From: Azolla caroliniana
Lineage: Eukaryota; Plantae; Polypodiophyta
Direction: 5' to 3'
DNA: 64,000 nt
Assembly: GCA_043228905.1 (NCBI GenBank)
Contig: JBHGNT010000013.1
Coordinates: 19,716,001-19,780,000, forward strand
Made by a program: the position numbers and the translations under genes. Positions 13,321 to 64,000 of this stretch are shown here, piece by piece; position 1 is the stretch's first letter, and each line of letters opens with the position of its first letter. A model generated the notes under the pieces. The model saw only the letters and a program-made list of their open reading frames with translations, was not told where the DNA came from and searched no databases.

Positions 13321-15750
<2,430 letters not shown>

Positions 15751-27000: not shown

Positions 27001-30000
27001 ATGAACTGGCTAAGAACCCCGACTGGAAAGCTGAGGTCTGGTCGGGTGATAGTTAAGTAGATAAGACTCCCAATTATTTGGCGATACTGTGTCGGCTCAC
27101 AGAATTTTCCAGAATCTGTTGTTAGCTTCATATTTCGATCAAGGGGTGTTGAGATGGACTTACACTCGGTCATTCCGAACTTATAGAGCAAGTTCAACAC
27201 ATAGTGTCGTTGTGAGAGTAGGAACCCTTCTAGAGTTTGAATGACCTCGATGCTGAGAAAATAATGTAAGTCATTCAGATCCTTCATAGAGACCTCATCT
27301 ATATAGAGACCGAAGAGAGTGGGGGATAGTGGGCATCCTTGCTTCACTCCAATTGTGCTAGCCACCGCCTTTGACAAGCCCTTGGAAGACCGGACTTTTC
27401 TTGACATGGATTCATAGAGTGCATAGATTCCCCATTGCATATATGTAGGAACACCAAGGGCTTCTAGCCGCTGCATAAGCCGTGCACGTGGCAGTGTCAA
27501 AGGCTTTTCGGAAATCCAGAAAACAGCAATAAATCCTCTTATTGTGGGCTCTGCCCTCAATAAGGGCTTGGAGGGTGAATATGTGATCCAAAGTTGTGAA
27601 CCCCTTCCGAAAGCCTGCCTGTCCAACTAAACGGCAACCATTCTGATCTGCCTATATACTCAATTCTGATTCTAGAATCGACCCATATAGTTTAGCCAAG
27701 TAATGGCCAATCATGATTGTCCTATAGTTGCTTGGCATCATGGGGTCTCCACTCTTGAGGATTGGCACAATGGTATGCTGAGTCCATCTAGTAGGGAAAC
27801 CTTCACACATGGCTCTATTAAAGATGTGTGCTAGCAATGGGAGCAAGGTGTCACAGGCATGGATAAAGTGCTCACCCACCAATCCATCATGATCTTGGGC
27901 CTTCCCAAATTGTAGCCGATCAATGGCATTTCTTACATTTTGTGGTGTAAAGAAGGTTGATTCATGTGGGCGTGAATCATTCGGGTGGGGAAGAGGAGGT
28001 TGCCCCGGTATACCATATAGAACCTTAGCATATTCATGCCACACCTGTGGTGAGGTTAATTGTGTGGTGGGCTGCCTCTCATTAAACATTTTCCATGCTC
28101 ATTTACTCCCTTGTCCTAGAAACAAGTGATACAAATGATCTTCAAATTTAGCCAAATACAATCTCTTCTTCTTCCTTACGAGGCGTTGGAAGGTTGCTCT
28201 CGCTTGGTTATGTGTATAAATGCCCCGTGTTGCATCACGCTGCAAGCATCTCCTTGGATCATGACATTCCTCATCATACCAACTATTTTGTATTACTCTA
28301 CCAAGTTTGGGGGGATTGGCCGATGTGTGAGGGAAGGCATTTGTGGCTGCTTTATGCAATGATTTGGACAATCCTTGGGTAAGCTCTTCAAAGGGTGCGA
28401 AAGGATCCAAATCTAGCATGCCATTGTAGACACTACAACTATACACATCAATTGTCTCGCAAGTAAATAGATACTTAGCCAGCCCACTCTCCTTAGCATA
28501 TACATCCTTTGTGCATCCATCCTTTATCTCGAAGCGTAGATATGCACGATCTACTGCCAAGCCAATAGGTCTACCTGATATTGTGAACACTGCTATTTCA
28601 TGTATAAGAGATGGAGATCCCATTAGATAATCGACTGTGCTTGCACCCCCTTTTGGGTTCCAACATGTCGAAGCATCTGATCTAGGCCATTGTGACAAGC
28701 CATTATATATCACAAATCCATGCGCACTTCCCAAGGCTAGAAAGTGTTTTCCATATTCAGTTATAGCACTCATATCTTGAGCTTGTCGCTTTAGACCAAC
28801 CTCTTTTGCCATAACTTCTCCATAAACAGCCTCGTTGGTGTTAAACATAGTTGGTTGTTCATCCTTGGTTTGTGCATTAAAATCTCCTAATAGTATTATG
28901 TCCCCCATAGTAGCAAATCTTATGATATCATCATATAGTGGTAGATATGGTGATTCACCTAGAGGTGCAAACCTTGAGTAGGCAGGTGGAAAGTAGCAAA
29001 TTGCAATATATAACTCGCTAAGATCCCCTCTTTTTATTCGTATCCACATGTAGCGTGCATCTACATCCTTATGGACAACATGCACTCTATCATGGAGCTC
29101 CTTTTTGTATAGCACAACCACTCCTCCCGAACCTCTAGTGCTTCCTCATGTCCGAGGTTGGGGGCGACATATTAACTCCTAGCTATATCCTTGTACCTTG
29201 GGGAGTTTGCTAGCCATGCATTGGTGAGTCTTTGTATACATAGCAATATCTGTCTTTTTCAATGTATCTTCAAAATATCTGACATCTGTCCGTAGAGAGC
29301 CGTTGCAATTCCATATGGTCATGCGTAGTGTCTCATAGGCCATATATTGTCATGCGGTCCTCTTCTCTGTAATAATGACCTTGCCATCTCTATAAACGGC
29401 CCATTTTCCTTCCTTTCTTGCATCAAGCACTCGTGGCATGTTTTCTTTGCGGTGTGCCACTTGGGCTGGAGTGAGATCGTCATCTAAGTATATTTTTCAC
29501 CCTTGAGTGCCTTTCTTTTAGAGAGGAAAGCTTTTTTCTTGTCTATATCCATGAAGCGGATGATAAGGGCTTTAACTCTAGACTCATCTCTTCCCACCCT
29601 CCATGCCGAAGCAAATGGAATATCTGATGCTCCAATCTTTAGAGAGAGAGAGCGAGAGAGAGAGAGTGCAAAGCAGAATATCACACAACACTACCTTTTT
29701 ACACTCAGATTACACAACTCTGATCATAATAATAACTACGTTGCCCTAGCTCTATATATAGGTATTTATAAATATAGCCATGAGTCGGCTTCCGCCAGCT
29801 TGCCTCTGGTTGGATCGGCCGAGTCGGCTCCTAACTGAGCCTGCTCTCATACATGTCCGGCTCACAACTGGACTGATTGGCATCCATCTGGTTCCTAGCC
29901 GGATAGGTTCTCCTCCCATCAGGAGGGACCTCTTCTACACAACAAATTCTTTCTAGTATTTTGCTTTGTTAATACTTGGTCCCACGTTTCTACTCCATAG

Positions 30001-33000
30001 AGAAGAGTCAGTGTCACAAGTGTATCAAACAGACACAGTTTAGTTTGTGGATCTTGGAACTGCAAATTTGCACATTGTCTTTCGAGAGTACCAAGGGCTG
30101 CATATCCATGAGAAAGTTGGGCACAAGCAGCCTTCTGTAAAGAGAACGTAGGCCCTGTAAATGTTACTCCTAGGTATGTGTAGGAGTGTGTATATGCCAC
30201 CTTCTCCTCTCCCAAGAAGAATTCTGGTTCCGACATTGTTACCCATGCTTGAGTGGTGCTAAGCACTATCACTTTAATTTTATCCATGTTTATCGACAAA
30301 CCTTTGTCCGTACAAAATATTTTAGAGGCGTTTAAATGTCTTGGTAGTCCCTCCAGAGAGTCAGAAATCAGCACAATATCATCAGCATATAGTAATGTTT
30401 GTACGCTATACCCGGTAGGCATGCTCCTGAATCCCTGAATCTCTCTATGTAATGTGATACCTCATCTATATACACCGAAGAGAGTGGGTGATGGTGGAAC
30501 ACCTTGATCTACTCCAATTGTAGTAATCATAGCCTCTTACAAACCATTGGGAGACACAGAGGGCTTCTAACCATTGCATAAGCCAAGCATGCACCATAAT
30601 GTCAAAGGCTTTTCGGAAATCCACAAAGCAGCAATAAATCCTCTTATTATAAGTGCTCTGCCCTCCTCGATAAGGGCTCGGAGGGGTCAAAGGATGTGAT
30701 CCAAGGTTGTGAACCCCTTCCGAAATCCAGCCTGTCCAGCTGAACTGAAGCCATTTAATATCTTTTAATGTCCTCAAGATACCGGTTGCGATCTATGATT
30801 TAAGAAGTGACGAATGCTAAAACCTATTACCAAAAAGGAGAGAAAGAGAAAGGAAGAGAAATTAACTTAAAAGGACGTAAGAAGTAACATGTCTTTTAAC
30901 CTTAATATTATAACAAAAAGAGAAAGAGAGAGAGAAAAGTAGAAAGTCAGCCTAAAAGATGTAAGAAGGGACAATGTGCCAAACAGATTGTTGAAGAAAC
31001 AGAGAAAAAACGTGCTGCAAAGGCACAGAGAATCAAACATAGGCATGTCCATATTCAGATTCAGGTAAATATCAAAACAATAATTTTTGGTATGAATACC
31101 TTAGCATGATCTTATTAGAAAATACTTTATCAGGAAACAGATAAAGAGATAAAAGATATGACAATTGAAAACAAGGTATTACAAAAACGTTTGCTTGCAA
31201 TTCAAAAAAGGCGTTCCACCATTGGAACCAAGCTTTTTCTTGAAGGAGCCGATACACAATATCAGATTGTAAGCATAATACTTTGTTCTCTAAGTCTATT
31301 TTAAGAAATCTATATTTACTATCCTTCTAATTCAGCTAGAGAGGATTTTGTTTTTATATGTTGGACAAAATATACATTTATGTGTAATTCTACTGCTAGA
31401 ACTTCCTGCGGGGATGAAATTGAGTTTTTCTCGACTATTCTCAGGCTAATACTCAACACACTTTGAATGCATTTGTATCATTTAAAACTGAGATTAAAAA
31501 AACATATGGAAATAGAAAATTAGAAATATGTATTTTACTATCCGTCTAACTCAGCGAGAGATTTTGTTTTTATATGGTGGACAGAATATAGCTTTATGCT
31601 TAATTCTACTGCTAGAATTTCCTGTGGGCAGGAAATTTGAGATTGTCCTCACTATTCTCATGCTTATAGTCAACATACCTTGAATGCATTTGTATCGTAA
31701 TTTAGATTTTATTTACTATAACTACAAGTCTACAATATATAATTGGTTTAATGAATTTATTTTCTTTATGTGTTATAGCTATAATGACACGTTGATGTAA
31801 AATATCACTGATATATTTTGGATCCAGATTTTTATATATAGGCCGGGTGGTAGATTACTTACAACTTTCAATCCATTGACTCTGGAAGAGTTTGGTTCAA
31901 ATTGTATGGGTTGATTTTATGTTATCCAGTCAGCATCTGAATCCTGATTGTGATCAGCATACGCACACAATTCCTATCGCATGTACGGACGACATCTCTG
32001 CAAAGATATCCTTTTTTCTGGTGTTGGAAATAATTCCTAAAGCTTTGAGAGGTTTTGGTGGGGACACTGGGTTACAGGCTATTTTAATCTTCTCAAGCAG
32101 TGCCAATCGCTTTGGAAAAACCACTTTGCTAATATCAGAATATGCTGAGCAGATGAATTCTCTTTATTAAAGCATCCAACAAAAGAATGCTGGAAGAGGG
32201 GACAGAAAGCTTCAAGCTTGCAATCATCAATTGCTTTTGAAGCTTACCATGGGAATTTCTTGAAGGAAGGCTTGATAAAACATGGATGGATATTTCTCTT
32301 AGTAAGGTGTAAATGATGTACCCTTGATGATTCAAAGGGGATAAACGTTCTCTATATCAAATCCTCCATTCGTAGTTCCGGCTTTATCGATAGTGCAAGA
32401 GTTTACAACACTTCGATCCAGTATATACAAGTAATGAAACCAGTAGGTCGTGGACATATTCGTAGAGCCATCAAACATGAACATCGGGTTGCCGTGCAAA
32501 CCCAAGACTAAAGAGAGATCGTTGATGTGATAGACTCACATAGGATTCCATTTGAACATATAAACTAATTCTTTTGTGAGTCTTATGAATTTATTTAAGG
32601 AAGAAGGAACTGAGAAAGGTCCTCCATATTATGTTGATCATTAACCATAGAACATTGGTGTATCTTGTTTGGGAACGCGCTGCTTACCTTACACATATTA
32701 TCCTGTTTTTGAATAATTTGGTTGTCAAAGTAATGGAGTTTTATGGTCATAGGCATTAAAGCAATGGATGGATGCTAAAGAAGAGTTAGAAAAAGTAATG
32801 GATGAGTACAATAATAAAGTTGACCGTATGCAAGAGAGAGTGAGAGATAAGCAACAAGAAGCTCATGAGCTCTATAAAGAATTTTCAGCATACAAATGGC
32901 AGGTGAACCATACTTTCTACTACCTTACTTCATAATTGCATTGGTACACATGCCATTATCTAGGATAAAACATGATTGGATGTGCCCGAATTTCAATGTC

Positions 33001-39551: not shown

Positions 39552-42500
39552 CTATGCTTCTTCTTCCACAGGAGAGCTTCTTATAGTTGCTATTTTATTT
39601 AGCAGCTCTTGTAGCACTTTTGCGTTCAAAGGCTTAGTGACATAAAAATCCATGCCCGCATCAATGCACCTTTCTCCATCACCGAACATTGCATGAGCAG
39701 TCATTGCCACAATAGGAATATTCCGACGTATCTTTCCAGCCTTCTCTAGTTCCCTTATCCGTGCTGTGGCTTGGAATCCATCACAAACAGGCATTTGAAC
39801 CTGAAAACAGTGTTAACTAATCATCAACAAGTCCATGGAACAGATCAGCTTATGATTTTGATGCTGCATAAAAACTGCAGAACATGGTAAAACAAAATTA
39901 TTGTCCTATATTGCGATGTTTGAAAATGCATAAGAGTTGGTAACATGCTAATCTTAAGAATGAAATTTTCTATTATCATTAATTAGCCTTTTTCTATTAG
40001 CTGTTGCTGCATCATGATTTCAAGTTTGGAAAGTTGAAAATTATTATTCAACGATTCTAAAGTTTAAATCATATTTCTGACTTAACAAATCGCTCAGATA
40101 AATGAATACGAAAAATGATCTTTTATTCTAATTAATTTAGAAACCAATTCAACTAGATTTCTTCTTAGGCTACCTCATATATATTAACACTTTGGACATC
40201 ATTCTCTAATGAGCAAGTTCATCTTCATCACTCATCTCAAATCTTCTCTCATAAAAAGATACGGTGGCAAACTCCATTCATCATCATGCGGTCATCTTGA
40301 TCCTCATAGAAGTATTCTGCATGCAGTGTGCAGGGTGATAGGACAGCTGTGCACACCTCTAGAAAGAATCTGCCAATTGTGTCAGCAGGGTATGGAATTT
40401 GAAGAACTTGCCACCAAACCATTTTTTATGAAATATGGGAGTATGAGAGAGATACCATTACCTCTTTAGTCAATGCTTTGGCCCCAAAGCCCACTAAGCA
40501 AAGTATAATATACACGAGGCAATATCATGAAGTGCCCAATCCTCCTTTTTGTCCTGATGGAAAATGTTGAATTTAATTATAACATCAAATATCTACGTAA
40601 GTTTTGACATGAGAAAGCTCCATGCCAATCCCTTCAGGCTAGGAAGTTTAATAATCGCTTTAGGAATGAAAAAAGCCTTGCTTGTTTTTGGAAAGATGAT
40701 GCAGAGGAGAGTTATCTCTCTCCAAGGAGAGGTTTGTCTGATGAATCGACTAGCTTCGAAGAAAATAATAAGAAATTAGCCTGGATTGCATGTTAGTGCA
40801 AAATTCCTTCGACAAGATGAATGATTTGAGGGGATACACATTCTCTATGAAGATGCAACATTGTTAGTTGCATTCTCCAATTGGACTTCATAGAGACGAT
40901 AGTACATATAAAATTTCCCTCACTTTCTTAATGTCTATATTGAATCAGCTGGATATTTTCAGGTTGCAGCAGTTTCAGTTCCATCTGATATGTAGATTCT
41001 GTATTTTTTAGCTTGTTTTACTGTATTCATAAGCATGTATTCCTTCAACAAGATCAATGATTTGAGGAGATCGCTAGCTGATATAACATTGAAGTTTCTA
41101 AACACATTCTTTCTTTATGAAGATGCAACATTGTAAGTTGTATTCTCCAATTGGACTTCATAGAGACATTAATACATTTAGAAATTTCTATCCCAGTCTT
41201 CTCCCTCTGAAGGATTCATTTGTGTGCTCTAAAAGATAAGATTTAACATTTATTTATATCTATTCTGGCCCTGTGGGGGATGTTTCTTTCTTGTATTCTG
41301 GCCTCGTGGTCTTTATATAGATGAGATATCTAACTACATAGAGTGATTGGGTGGGTTGGGAGCATGCTTAACAGGGGTAGCTATACTCATACTACTGTAT
41401 ATTGATGAAAATGTGTTAATTTCCGACTACTACGGATTCAGAAAAAGGTGTTAACAGGGATAGCTATACTCATACTACTGTATGTTGATGAAAATGTGTT
41501 TATTTCCGACTACTACGCAAAGGTACTCAAGATCTCCACTCAGGTCATCAAAACAACTGGCTGAAAATGGAGAATCATTCTTGGTATCCAGAAAATGCAA
41601 GAATGGATCCAGTCATATACCCTAACTATAAATGCACTACCCCCATTCTAATTACAGCTTAGATTGACCACATCTAAACATCACTAGTGGAAAAGAATAG
41701 GTTGACTTGAGCTGAAACCATTAAATTGGAAAATGAAAGAACATGGATGAGCTCCACATGGAACTTGGTAGGAAGCTGACCCACTACATGGCACACTTTT
41801 ACACATGTCAATGAATGGTGTTATTATCAGAACTTCTTGTCTGGATACAGATCTATCTCATGTGCTTCATAGTGTGGAGTGCACGGAAATAGATGCGTAT
41901 CCATACATATCTACCTCCAAGGGCTCCACATCAATTTCTAACTGATGTGACGAGTTCAGGAACTCATCACATCAGTTAGAGATTGAGATGGGTGGATTAG
42001 CATCTAAACCTTGGAAGGGCGGATATGCCAAATGTACCATCAGGAGGTAATAGGCAGAATACCATGTCTGCCATTGCGGTGTTTTTTTACGGGTATAAGA
42101 GGGATTGCCTCGGTCAAACAAGGCTTTGGCCCACTATGCAAGATCATGGAATACATATACCAATAAGGCTTGGATTGCTCTTATTGGAACTTACAGAGGA
42201 GTGTTGAGGGTCAGAAATATATGTAGCACAAGTCACCAATGGAGGACAGTCATTCCTTTTCGTGCTACAAGTCATCAACACAGGAGTTAAAATAGATGAA
42301 GGTCACGACTACCTGCACGACAGCCTCATCATCTATGTTGCCGAAAAAGGTGACGAGGCTCCCTCATTACAGAGATCTCTCCATTTTGGAGCAGCCCATG
42401 TTGGAGATTTTTCGTAGAGAGATTTCAGTCTATCTAAGTTTAGAATCTTAAATTCTTAGATACATAGATTCTTTAGTACCATATGTTTAGTTGTATTTAT

Positions 42501-45500
42501 GTTGGTTCTTGTTGTCAAAGACAATAAAATATTGTAAAATGTAAACTTCTTGTTTGATCCTCTAGCCCATTTTGGTGTCTCACTTGAAAATTGATCTATA
42601 TCATAATTTTTTTTCTCCTTCCTATCTTCCGCATTTATCTCTTCTTAGAATTATCAAGCACAACATTTATTCAGAATACAGTAAGGAAAAGAAATGCCAA
42701 AAGACAGTACATCCATTAAAATGAGATCAAACTCTTCTTTAGCTGCTTGTTCCACAGCCTCTTCACCGTTATTAGCCAAGACAGCTGTATGCCCCCATTT
42801 CTTTAAAAGAATAACCATTACACGTTGATTGACAGCATTATCTTCTGCTACCAGAATATGCAAGCGTTTGGGAAGGCTTTGTGATTCCTTCGGTGCTTTT
42901 TCCTGATAATTAAATGACGAGATTAGAAACTGACAGAGCATTGCATATAGAAATAAAGCATTTACATCTACCTCTAAAACAGCTGATTTATCTTGGTAAC
43001 CCAGAACCGACTGCAATACTTGAACCAATAAGGCTCGTTTAATAGGTTTGGAGACATGATAAATCAAGCCAAGTTCAAGACACCTAAGACAACAAAAAAG
43101 GACCACCTTAAAGAATAATATGAAACATAAATTAAACATATAATCTGTACAAGCTATCCACCTGGAAACATCTACGTGATTAATTGATGTAAGCATGATA
43201 ACTGATGAGAGACCACGACAAGAAATAGAAGACATATTCTTTACTGAGACAGGCTTCTCTCCATTAGAAGTATGACAAATGCAAAGACTGGCATCGGCTT
43301 TGCAGCTAAAAACCTCAGATTGTGTGGTAACTTTTTCAGTTGGCTTCTCCAAAGATTCACTATTTAGTTCAAGCTGAGCAGATTCAACTTGAAATCGTTT
43401 TTTTAAACAAGTGTCGTTTGTATGTAGAAATGAAATCAACTCGGACGCATCAGTTCCATCCAACCACATATCCAGCAGCAAAATATTGTACTTCTTGTTG
43501 GATCGAGAAGCCATTTCTAATGCACATATTGCATCTTCTACAGTTCCAGCTCCATCAACTATCATTCCCCAGTTCTGCAAGAAAAAGGACTGCTTAACTA
43601 GAGCACCTAGAGGGATTTTTATATTTCAAGCAAGGATATAACTTAACACATCAATAACTGAATGTCAATAAAACATTTAAATGAGGAGATAAAAAAGTAC
43701 CTTTAACATATCTATTAAGATCATTCGATTGGATTCATTGTCGTCTACAACCAGAGCATAAAATCCCTTGAACATGTTTGCCCATGGAGAAAATGGTACT
43801 GCATAAGATGGGGGTACTTTAAAACGAGCTGTGAACCAGAATATACTTCCATGACCCTTGATACCATCACTTTCCATCCACATGTGTCCGCCCATTGCAG
43901 TAGCCAGTCTATATGATATTACCAAACCTAAACCAGTTCCTCCATAAAGCCTGCAAAAACCACACTTCCTGATTTTGAGTCATTTAATATTAACTATGAA
44001 GACATACATTCCAACATCAAGAGTTGAATCCCTATGATATTTTTCCTTTTTACATGGTTCTCATACCTCAAAAGATTCTAAAGATTAAACATGCAATTGA
44101 TATATCAAGGATTGCACAAATATACTACAGACAAAATGAGTGACAAAATGCCGATTACATGTCCAATTTCATTCCTAGCAGGTAAAGGCTGATTCAGACA
44201 CTGGTTTAAAATAATCTAGGCTTCTTATTAATACACAATCTAAATTACGGATGTGACGCTTGGAGTGGTTAAACATCTATAGTATTATTGATACTTTACA
44301 ACCCGGACATGACAAAGGGGTTACAGTAGATCAGGCAATAGCGAGTTGCTGTGCATGTAGGCCCCAGCCTCATGGACTCACCACCATTGTCATCAACAGA
44401 TAAAGGCCATTGTCTCCCACCATTGTAGGTGATTCCCTCGCTTTGGAGACCTCTCCATTCTCAATCAACCATGCTAGTGATGTTTCAAAGAAAAAAGTTA
44501 CAATTTATCTGATTTGGGAATCTTACATGTATTGATAACAAGAACTTTAGTCACTTTTTATCTTATTTACTTTTATGACATTTAGTTTGGTTCGTTGTTG
44601 TAAAAAATAAGACAACACTTACGATGTAATCCATTGTTTGGTTTTGTAGGCCATTTTAGTCACTTAAAAGACATTAATATAGCTCTCTGTTCTTCTTTCT
44701 TTCTCCTTTATTAGAGTTTTTTCATATCAAACTTTATTGTTCTCCGTTTACAAGAACTTTGGTCACTTTTTATCTTATTTACTTTGATTACATTTAGTTT
44801 GGTTCATTGCTGGTAAAAAATGAGACAGCACTTAAGATGTAATCCATTGTTTGGTTCTTATACGCCATTTTGGTCTCTTAAAAGAAGTTAGTATATCTTT
44901 CTTTCTTTCAAGAGCTTGAACATCTATACTTAATATTCAATGACATTCCAGGACTTACGTGGGCATCAATCATAGTCAATGACATTTATTTCCAGATCAT
45001 CACTAGGCAGCTACATTGCTCTTACATAGGCATCAATATGTTCAATGAAATTTATTTCCAGGTCACACTAGTCAGCTACTTTACTTTTACATACACATCA
45101 ATCATGTGACAACTCCAGCCTGTCCCCACAACTCCTACATTACACAGCATAAAGGCTAATGAAAGTTTCCATACAGATTTTGTGTGGAACTACAAAGAAC
45201 TTTAAACAACACCAACCTCTGTGTTGAGGAATCTACTTGGGAGAATGCTTGAAATAGCAGCGACTGTTTTTCCTTAGGTATGCCCAATCCTATTAAAGGA
45301 CATTAGAATTATGAAACAAAATCAGTCAACGGAATGATATTAATTTGAGGATTAGAAAATTATTGACAGCCTTGATTCATACATACCAGTGTCTTTGATT
45401 CCAAAGAGAAGCTCAAAAGCATCAGTTGTCTTATTCTTCACAGAGACTGATGCAATTACCTCTCCTTTCTCTGTGAATTTTATTGCATTTCCTACAGGTG

Positions 45501-48500
45501 AAATATCAAGAACCAGAAAATTAAAAGCTTAGAAATAGATTCAAACCAGTTTCATGCAAAAATCTAATTATTTAGCAGGACCAAACAATACCACTTGATC
45601 TCTCTCCTGACTGATTTAATATCTTACTCTACAAGTGATAAATACAGTTTCTATAAAACTTGTTTGAATTGTGTTGTCAGTGTTGCCCAATACTGAGCTT
45701 CTACGACTGTATTGCTAGTTGAACAATTTATTTGGAAATCACCACAGCTACTTTCCTCCAATAGTTTTTAAAATTCAAAATGTGGATTTTTTTTCAATGT
45801 CAAAACTCAGTTTTAATACTAGGTAACTAATATTAAAACGTCGCCTATTATTCATTCCTTCCTTGACAATTTCAGCATGGTTGATTTTCATATGCAAGTC
45901 TGTATGAATCCACTACTTTCAAATGCAAAGGTTCCTTTCCACCAATTGTTTGAGCCTTCTCTCTCATGATTGTTTTATGTAAATATATGATTGACTGCCT
46001 ATAATTATAAGGGGATAAGGATCAAACGATGTAATTTATCAATTTTGAGGTATCCTTCTGTTGTCAACGTGGAGCACTTAATAGTCGTAAGCAGGTACTT
46101 AATGCGAACAACAGGACTATTATACCTTAAGTGCGAGTGTCACAGACAGTCAAGTTGTCACTCCTGGCTCCCACTTTATAAAAGGGGGGACAGTCAACAG
46201 TGAAGAAAAGTTTGCTGATAGAAGAAAAATAACTATCTGATTATCCATAGCCAATCCGCCCTCTTATTGGAGCCTCACAACTCCTGCATTTAACATTTGT
46301 TGAGCTGTGCTTCTCATCACCTTCTCTAAATGCTTCCCTCTATTATTATTAGTTGAACTGTTTGTCATCTAATTTATGTCCAACGAATTGTAGTGGCAGA
46401 ATTGTAGTGGCAAATGCATCTTTTGAGCATGGCATTATAATAGTACCAACGAACATCTACATGTTGTAATCATACCTATTTCTCAATCTACAGTAGCAAG
46501 CATTTAGAAGGTCAGCTTTGACTCCCAAATTAGGGAATGTCAAAAACTTACATGCAATCTAAAAACATGATTAGTGAAACCCCCTATATGACTCCAATCC
46601 GCCCTCTTATTGGAGCCTCATAACTCCTGCATTTAACATTTGTTGAGCTGTGCTTCTCATCACCTTCTCTAAATGCTTCCCTATATTATTATTAGTTGAA
46701 CTGTTTGTCACCTAATTTATATCCAACGAATTGTAGTGGCAGAATTGTAGTGGCAAATGCATCTTTTGAGCATGGAATTATAGTAGTACCAACAAACATC
46801 TACATGTTGTAATCATACCTACTTCTCAACCTACAGTAGCAAGCGTTTACAAGGTCAGGTTTGACTCCCAAATTAGGGAAATTATGTCAAACTTTTACAT
46901 GCAATCTAAAAACATGATTAGTGAAACCCCCTATATGAATCCAACTGAGGCGATGTTGAAAAAGTATCGTATGTAACTTGTAAGATGCCCCTACTATCAT
47001 AATGGTCTTTGCTCTGTAAAAATCTGTACCAGAAAGCTACTTCAGATCTATGATAGGAAGCAGCACCCTCATTTTTTGCTGCTCAAGACATCAAAAACTT
47101 GAACCTGGTCCCCTATTGTTTCAATGACCACTCTTGGCTAAAAAGTGGATCACCACCATCCAACCACCTCTTCTATGCAATCTGATAAGATTCAGGCTAC
47201 ATTGAAAACCTACCATCACAGAATTCCATCTGAGCCACTGTACTCGCCACGAAATCCAAATCCACGAAATTTCCAACTCAATTCTTATTTTGTTTCCAAT
47301 TATACTTAACACTTGGTCACAGTACTTTCCAGTTCATTTCTTTTTCTCTTTCTAAAGAAGGGTTTCCATGTAATGCATGAGATCAGTGATTGGATTTGTG
47401 TCAATAACGTAAATACTCAACTCAATTTAAAACCTTGTTCGTGAGGGGCACACATTCACAGGTAACCCTAAACACATAATATGTTCCAACCATGTTCCCA
47501 AAATCAAACACATAATACACCAACAGACTTGAATGAGTAAAGGTACAATGACAAGACATTATGAGTATAATCTAGATCCCCGTCCAAACAACTACTTAGC
47601 AAAGACCAAGGCAAGAAATGTTTAGGTAGAATCTAAATCCCGTCCAGGAATTACTGAAATACTTGTTGATGATGAACAAGTATTTTGTTAAACTTACCAA
47701 TAAGGTTGACAAAAATTTGTAACAGCCTTCCTGGATCACCCAAGAGATAATTAGGAACACCATCGTCAAATCTGCAGCATAGTTCTATACCATTTTTGAA
47801 GGCAGGAGCTGATTGCACTGAAACTGCCTGCTCTAGTTGGTCAAACAAAGAAAATTGTATTTCTTCCATTTCCAGTTTTCCCGCTTCAATCTTACTGAAG
47901 TCTAATATATCAGTGATTAGCCGTAATAAATGTTGAGCAGAAAAACACACCTGCCAAGAAATTTCAGACAAATAGTCCACAACAAAAATAAATATCTGAA
48001 GCATCATGTAGTTTAACTGCAATTATATATTAGAGCACTTACATAACTAAGATGTTCACACTGTTCAGAAGTAATCTGTGTGTCCAAACAGAGCTCTGTA
48101 AAATTTATGATTGCATTTAACGGTGTACGAATTTCATGGGACATGTTTGTCAAGAACTCTGACTTTGTTCTATTTGCGGCTACAGCAATATCTTTGGCTT
48201 GTTCTAGTTCTAGATCAACCCTCCTCCTCTCTTCAATTTTATTAGCAAGACCTTCATTAGCACGTGCCAAATCTAATGTTCTTTCTCTCACCTATGAAAA
48301 CAGTGTTAGAATGCTATTTTCTCATTCAATAATGAAAACATTTAATGCATAGGATACTTGACTTCATAGAACATTGCATTTATAGTTCAAAAATTCATGG
48401 CTTCAAATTTGATTTGCCACACTATTATTCAAAACATGGCCGACTTTACTAGACTAGCTGCTTGATGTGTGTAGCGCACAGATAATTTCTTCATAAGAAA

Positions 48501-51500
48501 TACAATCGAGATACCAACCTTATGCTCAAGTATCATTTGATGACTTGCAATTTGGTTTGCCATGCTATTGAAAGTATCTTTCAAGTCTGCTATCTCATCC
48601 CGAAATACGATTGTCCCTTTTTTCACCCTTGCTGTCATATTCCCTTGCCCTAGTGCCACGGCAGCTTTTTTGAGCTCCACAATTGGGGAGCTAACAATCT
48701 GCATGAATCATTTGGAAACATGAAATCATTTTACTTATATAGTATTCAAAAGAAAAATAAATACAATACAGCTTATTAAATATTCAAACAAAACACATCG
48801 TAATCCTAAGTCACTCAAACTATTATTACATATTGACATCAACTACAAAACTCACTTCTGATTACCTCTCAATAATATGATCAAACCCTACATGAGCTGT
48901 ATAAATAAATGGTAATGAGGAATTCTACTACCAAGGATTATCTGTATTGATCCCAAACCGATGAGCCCTCCTGTCCCATGACTGGAAAGGCTTTGGTTAT
49001 CCATTAGTACCAAGTCTATTAGAGGCGGAATGCTGCAATGAAGGAGTGGAAAAAATGTTTCAAAAGAAGAAGAGGGATTCGAACCCTCAGTAAACAATAG
49101 TCTACATAGCATTTTGGGTGCTACACCTGTAATCCCTGAGTCACCCTTCCTTTGATATCTCAAACATTCTCCCGCATTCACACTTGGGGTAGAAAATCTG
49201 TATCTAAGCTGTTGGTCCATGATAGTCACAGAGTCACATTTATTTTCGACAAAAATCTACCATTTCTGTGCTTCTTAAATGCAAGACCTTGCCTGACTGA
49301 ATTCTTAAGGTCTCCCACCTGACATTGATGTGACATGATGAGTCCTGCCAGCAGATCAATTCACAGCACATGTGGATATTCTTCAATAGTTGTTACTTCA
49401 TACAGGGATTTCCAATGCAATTTGAAGTGCTATTGATCTGTAACTTCTCTGTATGTCCATTGATTAGCAACCAAATAGGCATGCAGAAAATAATTATGCT
49501 ATAAAAAACAGATAGCGTCATATCTTTAAATGCTACTTTTTTCTTTACGCATCTGGCTCAGCAGCCAGAACCCCATTTTGGACATGTAGGGGAAAGTCGT
49601 GTTCTCTATGCATCTAATCGACATATTAGCATGTGCACAAACTGAATTCAGCACATGGACTCCAATGGATGTAAAAGATAATTACGCCATAAAAAACCCA
49701 ATGATATCATCTTTAAGATCTAATTGTTTCTATGCATAGTGTAACAACCAAAACCCACTTATGGGCATGTACAGTCTTCTTCCCTCATCAGATATGCAGG
49801 CAAATGTATGAAGAACAAATCTGCCAATTGCGCCATTATGTGGTGGAAATAAAAGAACATTATGTTTTCCTTTGTGCTATTCTTTATAAATTTATAAGCG
49901 GGCGGTACCACTGCCTCTTCAAACAAGGATTTGGCCTACTATATGAATGCAATGGAATATGAAATCAACAATGGTATGGACTACTCATGTTAAGAGTTTT
50001 AGAGACATAGAAAGGTGGTGAAGGTCAACAATACAACCACGATAGTTCATTAAAAAAGAACCATCACGATTCACCTTTGTCACTCCTTTCTGAACTCAAC
50101 GCCAATCAAGGGCTACACAAATGGGATCTCGATTCTCAATCAAAACACTCAAAAAGGGTTACAATAGATCAGGCAATAGCATTGTGTTGTGCACATATTC
50201 CATGGCCATTTGTGCCACAACCCCATCACCCTTGTCATTGATAGATTAATCCCATTATCACCCAGCATTGAAGGTGCTTCCCTTGCTTCAGTGATCTTTA
50301 TGGCATTGTCCATATGAACTTCAATGCATGTGGAAAATTACATTTTGTCCTGTATACAGAATCCACATAAGGAAATGTTTCTTTGTACATTCACTATAAA
50401 GGTGGGTAAATGAATTCCTCACAAAAAACATTTATGGGCCTGTTGCAGGAAGAAATCTGCAAACAGAACAGGGCGTCAATTTTTGGTTTTTCTAAGAAGA
50501 TATTGTATTGCTGTAAAGAATACATTCAAAGCGTAGGAAATATGTGAGATATTAATCTAGTGATGAGTTAGGCCAAAATTGGATTTTTTCAGTAGAATAA
50601 TACCTTACATTTGAATAATACCATACATCTGAAGTGAATCGTAAATTTATAAAAGGCCATTATCTAGGTCCTTAATTATACCACTTAAGAAGATATGGCT
50701 TTACCTTCGCTAATCCAAGAGATGCCATGACTCCCACAAAGGCAAACACAATAATTGTACTTATAATCACAATCTGCACACTCTGCACAGATGAATATGC
50801 CTCCTGAATATCAAGCTTTGCCAAAAGACCTGTAGAAATTGGATGAATTCATAACAAGTTCCACATGTGACAATACATATATACATATATAAGGACTACA
50901 CACCCCAATGCATGAATCCTACTGGTCTATATGCTGCCACAACTTTCGCACCATTATAATCCCGGAACACCATGACGCCTATCTCCCCATTTAGAGCCCT
51001 TTCCATTGCACCGCTTTTAGGAAACAGAGTCATATTTCGATTGCGAGCAGGGGGAAACAAAAAACGAACCATGTCTGAGCCTTCGGGTATACCTACGAGA
51101 ACTTCACCAGTTTTCTGAAGTCCTGTTCTTCCATAGTACAACTTTGCTAGATTTGTTGCATTAACAAATGTCACCAGTACACCAATAACCGTGTTTTTCT
51201 CCTAAAACAAATATCACAATGAAGTCATTACACATTAAATTGGAATTTGTCATTAAATAATGTTTCAAATGAAAACTTACCTGTGTGCTTACATCAAAGT
51301 AATTGCCCTAAATTTACATAAACATATAGAATAGGTAAGATTTATAAGTTCAAGTTCTCTATAATAAGCTCGCATACATATATAAATCAATCAGGTTGTT
51401 TCGGTACAGAGGTATTATAAGATTTCCAATCCATTCGATTTTGCATTCACATTTTCTTCATTTTGGCATCAATACTGAGTCATATCAATTGAAATTTAGT

Positions 51501-53221
51501 CATATCATCAGTTTCAGATGCTAGCATTCTGGCAAGTGTATGGAGGTTTTAGAACCACAAGACAGACATCCAACACATGCATCAAGAAGCTACTCCATCA
51601 ATGGACATCATTTCAGACCCGAAGATATAACGCATTACAATTCTGACAACATAAGTTTGTAATATTTTGATTGGGATCCACATTTAGTGTCCAATAAAGG
51701 TGAGCATCACCCGTCTGTCATATAATTCTAGATCCTTAAATACCAATGCAAGAAAAAATGTACAAAGTGATTTTTTGTACCCTTAACACCTATAAGACAT
51801 CATATATTGTGACATTTATAATGAGGAAGCTTCAGGACGACTAATTATCGTCAAATTAAAAAATGTCAGCAAGCAAATTCTAGAATAACACATTATAAAC
51901 ATGTACAACTTCAAGAAACTTGTTCCCTGGAGAGGACTTAATAATTACCAAAACCTCTAGAAGCCTATCAGGTTAAAAAGATTAATACTATCCAAAATAC
52001 CATAAGTGTTCATTCCAACATCCAAAAGGCATCAAAATGATAGACACTCCAAAAACCATGGATTTTTCCCATTAGTTTACGATTAACTATACCTTAATAC
52101 ATTTGCTTTTATAAACTTTCTTCGATAAAGGAACGATAAATTATTAGCGGCATAAATGAAACCTGTAAAACAGTTCGGGTTATTTGGTAAGTCCATCCAA
52201 ACTGATCATTTTTGAAAGGGTAGGAGAGCTTAAATTTATCCGCATAAATCTTATTCAATTCATCTCGCTCGAGCGTTGCATTGAAAATGCTGTGATGAGT
52301 TGATATCAATAATTTTCCTTCTCTGTCGTATATACCAGAGTGTAGGAAGTCTGAAATAACTGATGTCGCAGTTGCAAGGTCATAATATACAAATGACTTA
52401 TCAACTTTGCTTGTGTCCATCAAGTATCTGTTAATCATTACTCTGTTAGCTATTAGTTCCGTCTTCTCAGTTTCACTAAGCAAATATTCCCTCAATTGTT
52501 CCTGGCGTAAAGTAGAAACTGTGATTAGCCTGCGCTCTATCTCATCTACCAATTGATTGTGAGCCTTCAACAACAGAAAGATACCAGGCACGCCAGATGC
52601 AAGTAACACCTGTAAATTAATATTATCAAGAGACAGATATGACATGCTGAGAAATGGACACACACTCAGGCCTATATACAATAGAGTCACAGTTCATTAC
52701 AGTGAGGCGAATACTATAATGCATGAAATGTGTATTATCGATGCTTTGCTAGTTAGATCTTCGTTTACTTATGAATAAGAAACCTTGTTGGAAAGAGCAC
52801 ATCAAGGTCCATGTGTTTTGGACTATGGAGACTAGTACTTTTAGAACTTTCCATCTCCATGGAGACTAGTAATTTTGCACTATGGAAACTAGTAATTTTA
52901 GAACTTTCCATCTCCATGCTTAATTTACACTACCATATGGCATCACAAGAGCAGATGAATTACTCTGAAATGAACTTTTACCAGTAAACCAACAAAGATT
53001 GTTAGCTTGAGGCAGATGGGTGCCCTCAAACCTTTACCATGCCATTGATGATTCTGCACAAGTGCACTGCTGTCGAACTCTGATGTTGTCGATGTTGCCG
53101 ATATATTGCTCATATTGTTCGAAGATGCCAATTGTAATGCTGTTGGTGCTGGCATTTCCATTGACACGGTCCAACTACATTGTCTTGGATCATGATTTCC
53201 ACCAGATGAACCATCGCTCAT
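39552..53221 (-). CDS. Membrane-bound hybrid sensor histidine kinase: TM-Cache-like extracytoplasmic domain-TM-HAMP-HisKA-HATPase_c-REC-REC, ~1061 aa
   Basis: 14 phase-consistent GT-AG exons: 52982-53221, 52163-52609, 50904-51201, 50705-50829, 48519-48698, 48043-48291, 47698-47950, 45387-45491, 45217-45289, 43701-43950, 43162-43574, 42972-43083, 42711-42902, 39552-39800 (3186 nt). H-box MSHEIRTP, N-box NLIGNAIKFT, G1 DTGLGI, F-box LFQAFSQ, G2 GGTGLGL; two receivers (VVDD..LLLD..LTS..KP and AEDN..ILMDVQMP..MTA..KP). Confidence 0.93.
41520..42650 (+). mobile_element. Degenerate LINE 3' fragment (same family) in a histidine kinase intron
   Basis: Plus-strand homology to the LINE A/B 3' region (ccacatctaaacatcactagtggaaaagaa...gagatctctccattttgga...). 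Confidence 0.7.
44300..44908 (+). mobile_element. LINE 3' fragment with duplicated 3' UTR and (tttc)n tail
   Basis: gggttacagtagatcaggcaatagc... matches the reverse complement of 22770-22800. The tail region is repeated at 44538-44710 and 44750-44908. Confidence 0.78.
46251..46945. repeat. 343-bp tandem duplication in a histidine kinase intron
   Basis: ccaatccgccctcttattggagcctca...gaaaccccctatatga occurs at 46251 and 46594. Confidence 0.92.
49480..50295 (+). mobile_element. Degenerate LINE 3' fragment (same family)
   Basis: ctgcctcttcaaacaaggatttggcc and aagggttacaatagatcaggcaatagc match the reverse complement of LINE A 22780-23040. Confidence 0.7.

Positions 53222-62766: not shown

Positions 62767-64000
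<1,234 letters not shown>

What the first reader, a model, noticed from the sequence alone, without database searches (positions are those of the whole stretch)
39552..53221. Intact, intron-rich plant histidine kinase with a bacterial-style Cache-HAMP sensor and two receiver domains
Seen: 14 exons splice in phase into ~1061 aa. The order is TM1 ([22 protein letters not shown]), a ~270-aa extracytoplasmic domain, TM2 ([21 protein letters not shown]), a canonical HAMP ([17 protein letters not shown]...[15 protein letters not shown]), a signalling helix ([13 protein letters not shown]...EERRR...[16 protein letters not shown]), a full kinase core and two receivers. Established: the angiosperm HK classes (CHASE cytokinin receptors AHK2-4, ETR/ERS, AHK1, CKI1, AHK5) lack this HAMP plus ERT-helix plus double-receiver layout, which is typical of bacterial hybrid sensors. 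Inference: this may be a little-studied two-component receptor class of seed-free plants, either ancient and lost in seed plants or horizontally acquired and intronised. The 13 TE-filled introns rule out simple bacterial contamination.
Basis: partly seen in the sequence, partly recalled or inferred. Interest (0 to 1): 0.85.

Follow-up and report, generated by a model that had tools for sequence, protein, structure and literature searches.

The report
Fern Cache-HAMP hybrid histidine kinase gene
This is an intact, expressed plant gene for a membrane sensor kinase built like a bacterial one; the family occurs in ferns, lycophytes, mosses and their closest algal relatives, was not found in seed plants, and nobody knows what it senses.

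Summary
On the minus strand, 14 GT-AG exons (53221-39552) join in phase into 1061 aa. Spliced transcript contigs from public runs confirm eight of the 13 introns to the base. The order is TM1, a ~250-aa outside domain, TM2, HAMP, a helix with an ERT motif, HisKA/HATPase_c, and two receivers.

The outside domain folds as a bacterial-style double Cache (AF2 pLDDT 92; every top Foldseek hit is a dCache ligand-binding domain).

Relatives were found in ferns, Selaginella, mosses and zygnematophyte algae, and in no seed plant. They form one clade, and the window gene sits among the ferns. All 13 introns are shared with Selaginella and Physcomitrium and 10 with Closterium, so the gene is an old nuclear resident, not a recent transfer or contamination.

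The nearest outside relatives are bacterial dCache/PAS-HK-REC-REC-HPt hybrids (41-53% identity). One metagenomic protein is collinear from TM1 to the second receiver (37%).

Two details are wrong: most introns are short, and angiosperm cytokinin receptors also carry two receiver-type domains.

The family is probably the "NarX-like" group noted by Kabbara et al. (2018). If so, that label does not fit the fold. The ligand and the origin remain open.

The parts
52982..53221 (-). Exon 1 (aa 1-80): variable cytosolic N-terminus and the first half of TM1
   Evidence: ATG at 53221 and a GTAAAA donor. The segment before TM1 is conserved in relatives. An in-frame upstream ATG at 53266 is not excluded.
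52163..52609 (-). Exon 2 (aa 81-229): the rest of TM1 (aa 75-93 overall), the long N-terminal helix and the membrane-distal Cache module
   Evidence: Translation. dCache_1 at 17.8 bits. Only 20 relatives among 1.84 billion representatives. This exon is a row in alignment A1.
50904..51201 (-). Exon 3 (aa 230-329, ends in phase 1): the end of the distal module and the membrane-proximal Cache module
   Evidence: Junctions. Aligns to the sensor domains of all relatives.
50705..50829 (-). Exon 4 (aa 329-370): the end of the outside domain and TM2 (aa 348-366, about 50717-50773)
   Evidence: Hydropathy peak of 2.71. Junctions.
48519..48698 (-). Exon 5 (aa 371-430): HAMP domain
   Evidence: Pfam HAMP at 32.2 bits against a cut-off of 25. 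The following intron 5 is confirmed by spliced contigs.
48043..48291 (-). Exon 6 (aa 431-513): signalling helix with ERT (aa 433-435) and the first part of HisKA with the phospho-accepting His482
   Evidence: Pfam HisKA at 49.5 bits. Motifs. Introns 5 and 6 confirmed.
47698..47950 (-). Exon 7 (aa 514-597): the rest of HisKA and the start of the ATP-binding domain
   Evidence: Pfam HisKA tail. Introns 6 and 7 confirmed.
45387..45491 (-). Exon 8 (aa 598-632): N box and G1 box of HATPase_c
   Evidence: Motifs at aa 598 and 631. Introns 7 and 8 confirmed.
45217..45289 (-). Exon 9 (aa 633-656): F box
   Evidence: Motif at aa 645. Introns 8 and 9 confirmed.
43701..43950 (-). Exon 10 (aa 657-740): G2 box, the end of HATPase_c and the start of receiver 1 (acidic pair)
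   Evidence: Pfam HATPase_c at 27.6 bits. Introns 9 and 10 confirmed.
43162..43574 (-). Exon 11 (aa 741-877): receiver 1 with Asp775, then a ~70-aa variable insert
   Evidence: Alignment to relatives. In relatives this region scores 42-49 bits for Response_reg. The window exon alone has no Pfam hit. Most amino-acid differences from close relatives fall in the insert.
42972..43083 (-). Exon 12 (aa 878-915): the end of receiver 1 (conserved Lys)
   Evidence: Alignment. Introns 11 and 12 confirmed.
42711..42902 (-). Exon 13 (aa 916-979): the first half of receiver 2, up to Asp979
   Evidence: Pfam Response_reg at 48.1 bits. Intron 12 confirmed.
39552..39800 (-). Exon 14 (aa 980-1061 plus stop): the second half of receiver 2. 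No HPt domain follows.
   Evidence: Pfam Response_reg at 43.2 bits. TAG at 39552-39554.

Best explanation
The locus is an intact, transcribed nuclear gene of a fern-like plant. It encodes a member of a streptophyte family of bacterial-type transmembrane hybrid histidine kinases.

Shown: the gene structure, its expression, the domain order and the double-Cache fold of the outside domain. Also shown are the family's range (Zygnematophyceae, mosses, Selaginella, ferns; not found in seed plants), its single clade, and an intron pattern older than land plants.

Inferred mechanism:
1. A small molecule in the apoplast (identity unknown) binds the double-Cache domain of a dimer.
2. The change passes through TM2, the HAMP four-helix bundle and the ERT signalling helix to the DHp helices.
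3. This sets autophosphorylation at His482.
4. The phosphoryl group moves to a receiver aspartate, most likely Asp979 of the C-terminal receiver. Asp775 of the first receiver would act as a modulator or sink.
5. Because the protein lacks the HPt domain of its bacterial relatives, the phosphoryl group then passes to the plant's free HPt proteins and response regulators.

Origin: the whole sensor-to-receiver module is collinear with bacterial proteins. I think an ancient transfer from bacteria into an ancestor of Zygnematophyceae and land plants is the likelier origin, but it is not demonstrated.
For: - Gene model and splicing.
- Domains on exon references.
- Catalytic and receiver residues and TM segments.
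- Collinear alignment to relatives.
- Sensor fold: AF2 pLDDT 92 and pTM 0.84. All 50 listed Foldseek PDB hits (of at least 500) are dCache or tandem-PAS ligand-binding domains at probability 1.0 and TM 0.55-0.76, mostly 0.6-0.7. The protein-language-model neighbours are all bacterial Cache/HAMP clusters.
- Range of the family.
- Monophyly, with the window gene inside the fern clade.
- Introns: 13/13 positions and phases shared with Selaginella and Physcomitrium, 10/13 with Closterium.
- Bacterial affinity: 41-53% identity over HisKA to REC2. The model matches P0264 at 37% over aa 65-783 (E 5e-143) plus 43% over 865-1037. P0264 is dCache_1 (57 bits)-HAMP-HisKA-HATPase-REC-REC-HPt on a contig of 62-65% GC.
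- Constraint: 19 synonymous against 21 non-synonymous among the 40 listed differences from close relatives' transcripts. In receiver 2 the count is 5 to 0.
Against: - No biochemical datum exists for any member. Ligand binding, kinase activity, the route of phosphotransfer and the membrane location are all inferred.
- The dCache_1 sequence score of the window exon (17.8 bits) and of plant relatives (18-38 bits) is below Pfam's cut-off of 45.
- The fold was predicted for the closest full-length relative (P0033), with the window exons as alignment rows, not for the window protein itself.
- The window's first receiver has no Pfam hit of its own.
- The tree splits streptophytes from bacteria on a single branch and has no eukaryotic outgroup. 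It can show neither a donor nor the direction of transfer.
- AHK1 and CKI1 could not be put in a tree.
Confidence: 0.78

Rival explanations
1. It is the fern orthologue of the AHK1/CKI1-type (Sln1-like) osmosensing kinases. Its two-TM outside loop would sense turgor or osmolarity rather than a ligand.
For: It has the same gross topology: two TM helices around a large outside domain, then a kinase and a receiver. PMC6324907 describes that topology for the AHK1 group. AHK1 could not be compared directly.
Against: The sensor exon finds no AHK1-type protein and no seed-plant protein among 1.84 billion representatives. No seed-plant or AHK1-like protein is among the best 120 kinase-region hits, whereas bacterial hybrids at about 45% identity fill the list. 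The outside domain is a complete double Cache followed by HAMP. From general knowledge, neither is annotated in AHK1; this was not tested here.
Confidence: 0.05
2. It is a nitrate/nitrite sensor of the NarX type, as Kabbara et al. proposed for what is probably the same group (KniteHK29/44, SmoelHK12/15, PpateHK38).
For: PMC6324907 reports 'domain topology and significant similarity' to NarX for two Selaginella kinases and one Physcomitrella kinase. These are the same gene counts found here. NarX also has two TM helices followed by HAMP.
Against: The outside domain is about 250 aa and folds as a double Cache, not as the ~110-aa four-helix bundle of NarX. The DHp domain is HisKA (PF00512), not HisKA_3, and no PilJ/NarX-type sensor family is hit. 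The identity of the two groups could not be verified, because the supplement is not held. Nitrate binding by a Cache pocket is not excluded by any test made here.
Confidence: 0.07
3. It is bacterial contamination, a recent horizontal acquisition or a decaying relic without function.
For: The domain layout is bacterial and the best outside relatives are bacterial.
Against: There are 13 spliceosomal introns, eight confirmed in transcripts. All 13 are shared with a lycophyte and a moss, and 10 with an alga. GC is 34-37% like the surrounding plant DNA, against 62-65% in the bacterial relative. The flanks carry tubulin, a BEACH-WD40 gene and retrotransposon remains. The reading frame is open and all catalytic residues are kept. 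Substitutions are biased towards synonymous changes.
Confidence: 0.02
4. Same protein and mechanism, but a different origin. The family would descend vertically from an old eukaryotic or plastid-derived kinase and only look bacterial because both evolve slowly. No horizontal transfer into streptophytes would have taken place.
For: The trees separate all streptophyte from all bacterial sequences on one branch, without nesting. The sensor is only 28-33% identical to the best bacterial sensors. The intron pattern is very old. The two-receiver layout, and a weak match to the CRE1 first-receiver family, link it to other plant kinases.
Against: No relative was seen outside Zygnematophyceae and land plants in three searches. 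Whole-length collinearity at 37% with a bacterial-type protein, and about 45% identity over 600 aa to bacterial hybrids, is about twice the bit score obtained for a plant CHASE receptor.
Confidence: 0.3

Closest known systems
Bacterial dCache_1-HAMP hybrid histidine kinases with two receivers and a C-terminal HPt (for example metagenomic P0264, whose kinase part is 61% identical to a Planctomyces MAG; and PAS- or Cache-linked HK-REC-REC-HPt proteins of Planctomycetota, Binatia and Thermodesulfobacteriota)
   Same: The order of parts is the same from TM1 through dCache, TM2, HAMP, ERT helix, HisKA, HATPase_c, REC and REC. Identity is 37% in one alignment over 719 residues, and 41-53% over the kinase and receivers.
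   Different: The plant protein has no HPt domain. A ~70-aa variable insert splits its first receiver. Its gene has 13 spliceosomal introns. Its sensor falls below Pfam's dCache_1 cut-off. Its outside domain carries three N-x-S/T sequons in the window protein; two lie at alignment positions where most family members also have an N-x-S/T sequon, by my reading of alignment A1.
'NarX-like nitrate/nitrite sensor homologue' group of streptophyte kinases (KniteHK29/44, SmoelHK12/15, PpateHK38; Kabbara et al. 2018, PMC6324907)
   Same: The species pattern is the same (present in Selaginella and Physcomitrella, not listed for Marchantia or seed plants). The gene counts are the same. The two-TM plus HAMP topology is the same. 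The same idea of horizontal acquisition was raised.
   Different: The identity of the two groups is inferred, not verified. Here the sensor is shown to be a double Cache with a HisKA-type kinase and two receivers, which does not fit NarX.
CHASE-domain cytokinin receptors (AHK2-4/CRE1)
   Same: They are membrane hybrid kinases with the layout kinase, first receiver(-like) domain, second receiver, and they work through free HPt proteins. The MtCRE1 cytoplasmic region matches at 268 bits in three stretches. There is a weak PF24896 match in the first receiver of relatives.
   Different: Their sensor is CHASE and they have no HAMP. Their similarity is about half that of the bacterial hybrids. They are present in seed plants, whereas this family was not found there.
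Eukaryotic dCache_1 proteins with a VWA insertion (alpha2delta, CACHD1 and relatives; Gumerov et al. 2022, PMC8915833)
   Same: Both have a double-Cache extracellular domain of bacterial ancestry in a eukaryote.
   Different: That paper states that every eukaryotic dCache_1 protein has a VWA domain inserted. This family has an uninterrupted, bacterial-style dCache joined to HAMP and a histidine kinase. In a weak profile alignment to Mlp24 (E 0.018), the residue aligned with an Mlp24 Asp is hydrophobic. I take that Asp, from memory, to be the counterpart of PctA D173, which binds the amino group.

Membership tests
dCache_1 (double Cache) extracellular sensor domain | Long N-terminal helix followed by two PAS-like alpha/beta modules between two TM helices | tested here: met
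   The AF2 model of the closest relative's outside domain (alignment A1 includes window exons 2 and 3) has pLDDT 92. All 50 listed Foldseek PDB hits are dCache or tandem-PAS domains, at probability 1.0 and TM 0.55-0.76.
dCache_1 (double Cache) extracellular sensor domain | Pfam PF02743 score at or above the gathering cut-off (45 bits) | tested here: not met
   Window exon 2 scores 17.8 bits. Full-length plant and algal relatives score 17.8-37.6 bits, though over the whole model length. The bacterial relative P0264 passes at 57 bits.
HAMP-linked transmembrane histidine kinase | HAMP domain directly after TM2 | tested here: met
   PF00672 at 32.2 bits against a cut-off of 25 on exon 5. TM2 ends at aa 366 and HAMP starts at about aa 371.
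Hybrid histidine kinase (HisKA class) | HisKA with the phospho-accepting His, and HATPase_c with N, G1, F and G2 boxes | tested here: met
   Pfam hits on exons 6, 7 and 10. Motifs lie at aa 482, 598, 631, 645 and 660.
Hybrid histidine kinase (HisKA class) | C-terminal receiver with acidic pair, Asp, Thr and Lys | tested here: met
   Response_reg at 48.1 and 43.2 bits on exons 13 and 14. Asp979 and the conserved residues are visible in the translation.
Hybrid histidine kinase (HisKA class) | Second (internal) receiver domain | tested here: inconclusive
   Window exon 11 alone gives no Response_reg hit. The aligned region of relatives scores 42-59 bits. The window keeps the acidic pair, Asp775, Thr and Lys.
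Bacterial HK-REC-REC-HPt hybrids | C-terminal HPt domain | tested here: not met
   The protein ends 60-70 residues after the receiver lysine. There is no Hpt hit in the window exons or in plant relatives, whereas bacterial relatives have PF01627.
Streptophyte dCache-HAMP kinase clade | Groups with the plant and algal members in a tree and shares their intron positions | tested here: met
   The clade has SH-aLRT 100 and the window gene lies inside the fern subclade at 100. 13/13 introns are shared with Selaginella and Physcomitrium and 10/13 with Closterium.
CHASE cytokinin receptors / AHK1 / CKI1 / AHK5 / ETR | Class-specific sensor (CHASE, ethylene-binding TM domain and so on) and orthologues in angiosperms | tested here: not met
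   There is no CHASE or other class-specific Pfam hit. No seed-plant protein appears. MtCRE1 scores 268 bits against about 500 for bacterial hybrids. A tree with AHK1 and CKI1 was not possible.
NarX/NarQ nitrate sensors | Four-helix-bundle periplasmic sensor with P box, and a HisKA_3 dimerisation domain | tested here: not met
   The fold is a double Cache. The DHp domain is PF00512, and no PilJ/NarX-type or HisKA_3 hit appears.
dCache_1AA amino-acid sensors | AA_motif (PctA Y121, R126, W128, Y144, D173; PMC8915833) | tested here: inconclusive
   In the only usable alignment (profile A1 against Mlp24, E 0.018), an Mlp24 Asp aligns with a hydrophobic residue. I take that Asp, from memory, to be the D173 counterpart. 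The Tyr of 'PY' is kept only in some algal members. The alignment is too weak to be decisive.

The most novel reading that the evidence does not exclude
A complete bacterial chemosensor kinase (dCache-HAMP-HK-REC-REC) entered the nuclear genome of a common ancestor of Zygnematophyceae and land plants. The donor would have been a bacterium of the kind that lives on algae, and the nearest full-architecture relative has a Planctomycetes-like kinase. The gene lost its HPt domain, was wired into the plant HPt and response-regulator relay, gained introns, and persisted for hundreds of millions of years as an apoplastic small-molecule receptor. It was then lost in seed plants. It would also be a second, independent lineage of Cache sensors in eukaryotes, contrary to the published statement that all eukaryotic dCache_1 proteins carry a VWA insertion.
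Probability: 0.4. Interest if true: 0.7.

Novelty: new member of a known kind. Interest (0 to 1): 0.55.

Why it matters
Two-component receptors of flowering plants are well studied (cytokinin, ethylene, AHK1, CKI1, AHK5). This family is a further receptor class that mosses, lycophytes, ferns and the algal sisters of land plants keep, and that was not found in seed plants. Its ligand is unknown.

The sensor is a double Cache, the commonest small-molecule sensor of bacteria. The methods used to find ligands of bacterial Cache domains therefore apply directly. Physcomitrium appears to have a single gene, so a knock-out is practical.

The finding bears on three questions:
- which signalling tools streptophytes had when plants moved to land;
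- how much of that tool-kit came from bacteria;
- what was discarded on the way to seed plants.

It also corrects two statements in the literature, if the group identity holds: the 'NarX-like' label, and the claim that every eukaryotic dCache_1 carries a VWA insertion.

Tried and rejected
Those tools received exon pieces by reference, or stored full-length relatives (P0002, P0033) as stand-ins. The joined model was used only inside local scripts for alignment, BLAST against stored proteins and trees.
PDB scores for the MtCRE1, AHK4, AHK5, CKI1 and ETR1 pieces were used instead.
- Literature searches for HAMP/Cache plant kinases and for accession numbers of family members found no functional study. 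The supplement of PMC6324907 that would link SmoelHK12/15 and PpateHK38 to these proteins is not held.
- The species of the window was not identified. Earlier notes gave no taxon. The WD40 exon's best named hit is Ginkgo at 61%, with angiosperms at 59% or less, which shows only that the source is no close kin of those. The tree places the gene among ferns.
- A donor lineage was sought by adding P0264 and a Planctomyces MAG to the tree. They group with other bacteria, not next to the plants. The genome scan found no named bacterium with the full dCache-to-HPt protein; L004 has PAS in place of the sensor on a cut contig.
- Rfam found nothing in the window.
- RNA support for introns 1-4 and 13 was not obtained, because only one read-laying run was available.

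Full report
**What is in the sequence**

The gene lies on the minus strand. Stop-to-stop frames and the junction sequences give 14 exons:

| Exon | Coordinates |
|---|---|
| 1 | 53221-52982 |
| 2 | 52609-52163 |
| 3 | 51201-50904 |
| 4 | 50829-50705 |
| 5 | 48698-48519 |
| 6 | 48291-48043 |
| 7 | 47950-47698 |
| 8 | 45491-45387 |
| 9 | 45289-45217 |
| 10 | 43950-43701 |
| 11 | 43574-43162 |
| 12 | 43083-42972 |
| 13 | 42902-42711 |
| 14 | 39800-39552 |

Every intron begins with GT and ends with AG. The exons add up to 3186 nt, or 1061 codons with one terminal stop.

The introns measure 372, 961, 74, 2006, 227, 92, 2206, 97, 1266, 126, 78, 69 and 2910 nt. Seven of the 13 are under 130 nt, so 'TE-filled' fits only the large ones. 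Intron 9 holds a high-copy repeat at about 44300-45100. Intron 7 holds a 343-nt tandem duplication.

**Expression and splicing**

One 6-kb stretch (42700-48699) was laid against contigs of four public runs. Contigs from three runs skip exactly introns 5 to 12. All the joints read CT..AC on the plus strand, which is GT..AG on the gene's strand.

- One 2052-nt contig (run X4) runs through exons 7 to 13.
- One contig of run X1 matches the window without any mismatch and lacks intron 10. The source species, or a very close relative, therefore transcribes and splices the gene. That contig still holds at least 103 nt of intron 9.
- Runs X2 and X4 come from close relatives (most pieces are 90-95% alike).
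- Of the 40 listed differences from these transcripts, 19 are synonymous and 21 are not. Twelve of the 21 fall in the variable insert of the first receiver. Receiver 2 has five synonymous changes and no replacement. This is a partial list, but it points to purifying selection.
- Introns 1-4 and 13 were not covered.

**Domains**

Exon pieces went in by reference, and stored full-length relatives served as stand-ins. The joined model was used only in local scripts.

Pfam on the exon pieces:

| Family | Exon(s) | Bits | Cut-off |
|---|---|---|---|
| HAMP | 5 | 32.2 | 25 |
| HisKA | 6 | 49.5 | 26.9 |
| HisKA (tail) | 7 | 18.2 | 26.9 |
| HATPase_c | 10 | 27.6 | 26.4 |
| Response_reg | 13 | 48.1 | 30.2 |
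| Response_reg | 14 | 43.2 | 30.2 |
| dCache_1 | 2 | 17.8 | 45 |

Hydropathy finds two membrane segments, aa 75-93 and 348-366. The ERT motif is at aa 433. The phospho-accepting His is 482. The N, G1, F and G2 boxes lie at aa 598, 631, 645 and 660. The receiver aspartates are at 775 and 979.

The first receiver is split by a ~70-aa variable insert. Its window exon has no Pfam hit of its own. The aligned region of relatives scores 42-49 bits, and 59 bits in an uninterrupted bacterial relative.

**The sensor fold**

An alignment of 23 sensor domains from 23 relatives, plus window exons 2 and 3 (A1), was used to model the outside domain of the closest full-length relative, P0033. The model has mean pLDDT 92 and pTM 0.84. 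It shows a long N-terminal helix and two alpha/beta modules.

Foldseek against the PDB returns only double-Cache or tandem-PAS ligand-binding domains among the listed hits. Examples are Mlp24, PctA, TlpC, CtaA, Tlp3 and the rpHK1S-Z16 kinase sensor. Probability is 1.0 and TM is mostly 0.6-0.7. Language-model neighbours of the sensor plus HAMP are all bacterial Cache/HAMP clusters.

**Relatives**

*Sensor exon.* Exon 2 was searched with phmmer against 1.84 billion representatives and found only 20 proteins. The named ones come from Adiantum, Ceratopteris, Selaginella, Spirogloea and Mesotaenium. The full-length ones share the architecture.

*Kinase and receiver region.* A search with this region of P0002 listed family members from ferns, Selaginella and mosses (Physcomitrium, Ceratodon, Sphagnum), and from Closterium and Mesotaenium. 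After these came bacterial HK-REC-REC-HPt hybrids at about 45% identity over about 95% of 619 residues (about 500 bits). No seed-plant protein is among the best 120.

*Sensor plus HAMP.* A search scored on this part alone again found ferns, Selaginella and mosses. It then found bacterial dCache-HAMP proteins at 28-33% identity over the whole region.

*Annotation.* Database names are only 'histidine kinase', 'uncharacterized', 'dokA' or 'kinase J-like'.

*PDB comparison.* With the same kinase query, the cytoplasmic part of a legume cytokinin receptor (7p8e, MtCRE1; identified through PMC8498639) scores 268 bits. The isolated plant pieces score less: the receivers of AHK4, AHK5 and CKI1 score 80, 75 and 51 bits, and the ETR1 kinase-domain chain (4pl9) 83 bits.

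**Trees and introns**

Maximum-likelihood trees of HisKA to REC2 (about 540 columns) put all streptophyte sequences in one clade (SH-aLRT 100). The inner order is Zygnematophyceae, then mosses plus Selaginella, then ferns.

The window protein lies inside the fern clade (100). Its subclade holds a transcript from run SRR17638748, two Adiantum paralogues and a Pteridium protein (97). Ferns have at least three paralogue groups. The source is therefore most likely a fern, but the species was not identified.

The exon structures of the Selaginella, Physcomitrium and Closterium genes were mapped from their genomic loci. On a common alignment, all 13 window introns coincide in position with introns of Selaginella and Physcomitrium. 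They also coincide in phase wherever phase could be resolved. Ten coincide with Closterium. The gene structure is therefore older than the split between Zygnematophyceae and land plants. Contamination and recent transfer are excluded. GC content points the same way: 34-37% here against 62-65% in the bacterial relative. So do the plant genes around the locus.

**Bacterial affinity and origin**

The window protein is 41-53% identical to bacterial hybrids over the kinase and receivers.

One metagenomic protein, P0264, has this architecture: dCache_1 (57 bits), HAMP, HisKA, HATPase_c, two receivers and HPt. It aligns with the window protein in a single stretch from TM1 into the first receiver (aa 65-783, 37%, E 5e-143). 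A second stretch covers the second receiver (43%). Its kinase part is 61% identical to a Planctomyces MAG. That MAG's contig is cut and carries PAS where the sensor would be.

In the tree, P0264 groups with Planctomycetota inside the bacterial side, not next to the plants. The tree has no eukaryotic outgroup. No donor and no direction can therefore be read from it. An old transfer from bacteria is the likelier origin. It would explain the whole-length collinearity, the restricted range, and a similarity to bacteria twice that to a plant cytokinin receptor. Old vertical descent is not excluded.

**Comparison with what is known**

*Kabbara et al. (PMC6324907).* They report that KniteHK29/44, SmoelHK12/15 and PpateHK38 have a sensing region with 'domain topology and significant similarity' to bacterial NarX. 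They suggest horizontal acquisition and nitrate sensing. The gene counts (two in Selaginella, one in Physcomitrella) and the species pattern match this family, so it is probably the same group. I could not verify this. If it is the same group, the NarX label does not fit: the sensor is a 250-aa double Cache, the DHp domain is HisKA rather than HisKA_3, and two receivers follow.

*Gumerov et al. (PMC8915833).* They state that every eukaryotic dCache_1 protein has a VWA insertion. This family is an exception, probably missed because its sequence score is below Pfam's cut-off.

*The amino-acid motif.* In a weak profile alignment to Mlp24 (E 0.018), an Mlp24 Asp aligns with a hydrophobic residue. 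I take that Asp, from memory, to be the counterpart of PctA D173, which binds the amino group. Canonical amino-acid binding is therefore doubtful, but this is not settled.

The family's first receiver even gives a weak match to it.

**Mechanism**

The protein parts are shown; the mechanism is inferred. By analogy with bacterial Cache-HAMP kinases (established knowledge of these families), ligand binding in the outside domain of a dimer is passed through TM2, HAMP and the ERT helix. This sets autophosphorylation at His482. The phosphoryl group goes to a receiver aspartate. Because there is no HPt domain, it then goes to free plant HPt proteins.

The following are all unknown: the role of the first receiver, the ligand, the membrane in which the protein sits, and the downstream regulators.

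**Verdict**

- The gene is a new (fern) member of a family that is catalogued but uncharacterised, and probably mislabelled.
- It is a good, testable lead rather than a surprise of the first order.

Noticed in passing
window 13324-14438 (-): Two adjacent open frames carry a tubulin GTPase domain (103 bits) and a tubulin C-terminal domain (178 bits). This is a tubulin gene upstream of the kinase locus.
   Followed up: partly
window 26334-30422 (-): Open frames carry reverse-transcriptase fragments (RVT_1 and RVT_2, weak to moderate scores). These are retrotransposon remains between the tubulin and kinase genes.
   Followed up: partly
window 62770-63918 (-): A 383-aa open frame of WD40 repeats is the C-terminal part of a BEACH-domain (SPIRRIG/lvsA-like) protein. 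The best named hit is Ginkgo at 61%, with angiosperms at 59% or less. An unnamed ENA contig matches at 95%.
   Followed up: partly
window 46251-46944 (intron 7): A tandem duplication of a ~343-nt unit; the two copies are 93-96% alike.
   Followed up: no
window 44300-45100 (intron 9) and 50152-50337 (intron 4): The stretch in intron 9 is held at very high depth in all four runs, so it is a high-copy dispersed repeat. Open frames there and in intron 4 share similar peptide stretches, which suggests two diverged copies of one element.
   Followed up: partly
window 43951-44053 (start of intron 9): A contig of run X1 (no mismatch to the window) has intron 10 removed but still holds at least 103 nt of intron 9. 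This is either a partly processed transcript or intron retention.
   Followed up: no
P0019 and P0074 (Mesotaenium ME000202S02767 and ME000202S02769): Two family members carry locus names two numbers apart on one Mesotaenium scaffold and are nearly identical in the kinase region. This looks like a local duplication; the second lacks the sensor in its annotated form.
   Followed up: no
P0033:705-965 and P0002:695-900: The end of the first receiver of fern relatives gives a sub-threshold match (17-20 bits, cut-off 27) to PF24896, the first receiver domain of AHK4/CRE1. This may point to a shared origin of the kinase-REC-REC cytoplasmic module with the cytokinin receptors.
   Followed up: no
L001 (ENA ERZ1034373, 3174-nt contig): A metagenome assembly holds a low-coverage genomic fragment that encodes a protein 95% identical to exon 2. 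This is plant DNA from a close relative of the source, present in an environmental sample.
   Followed up: no
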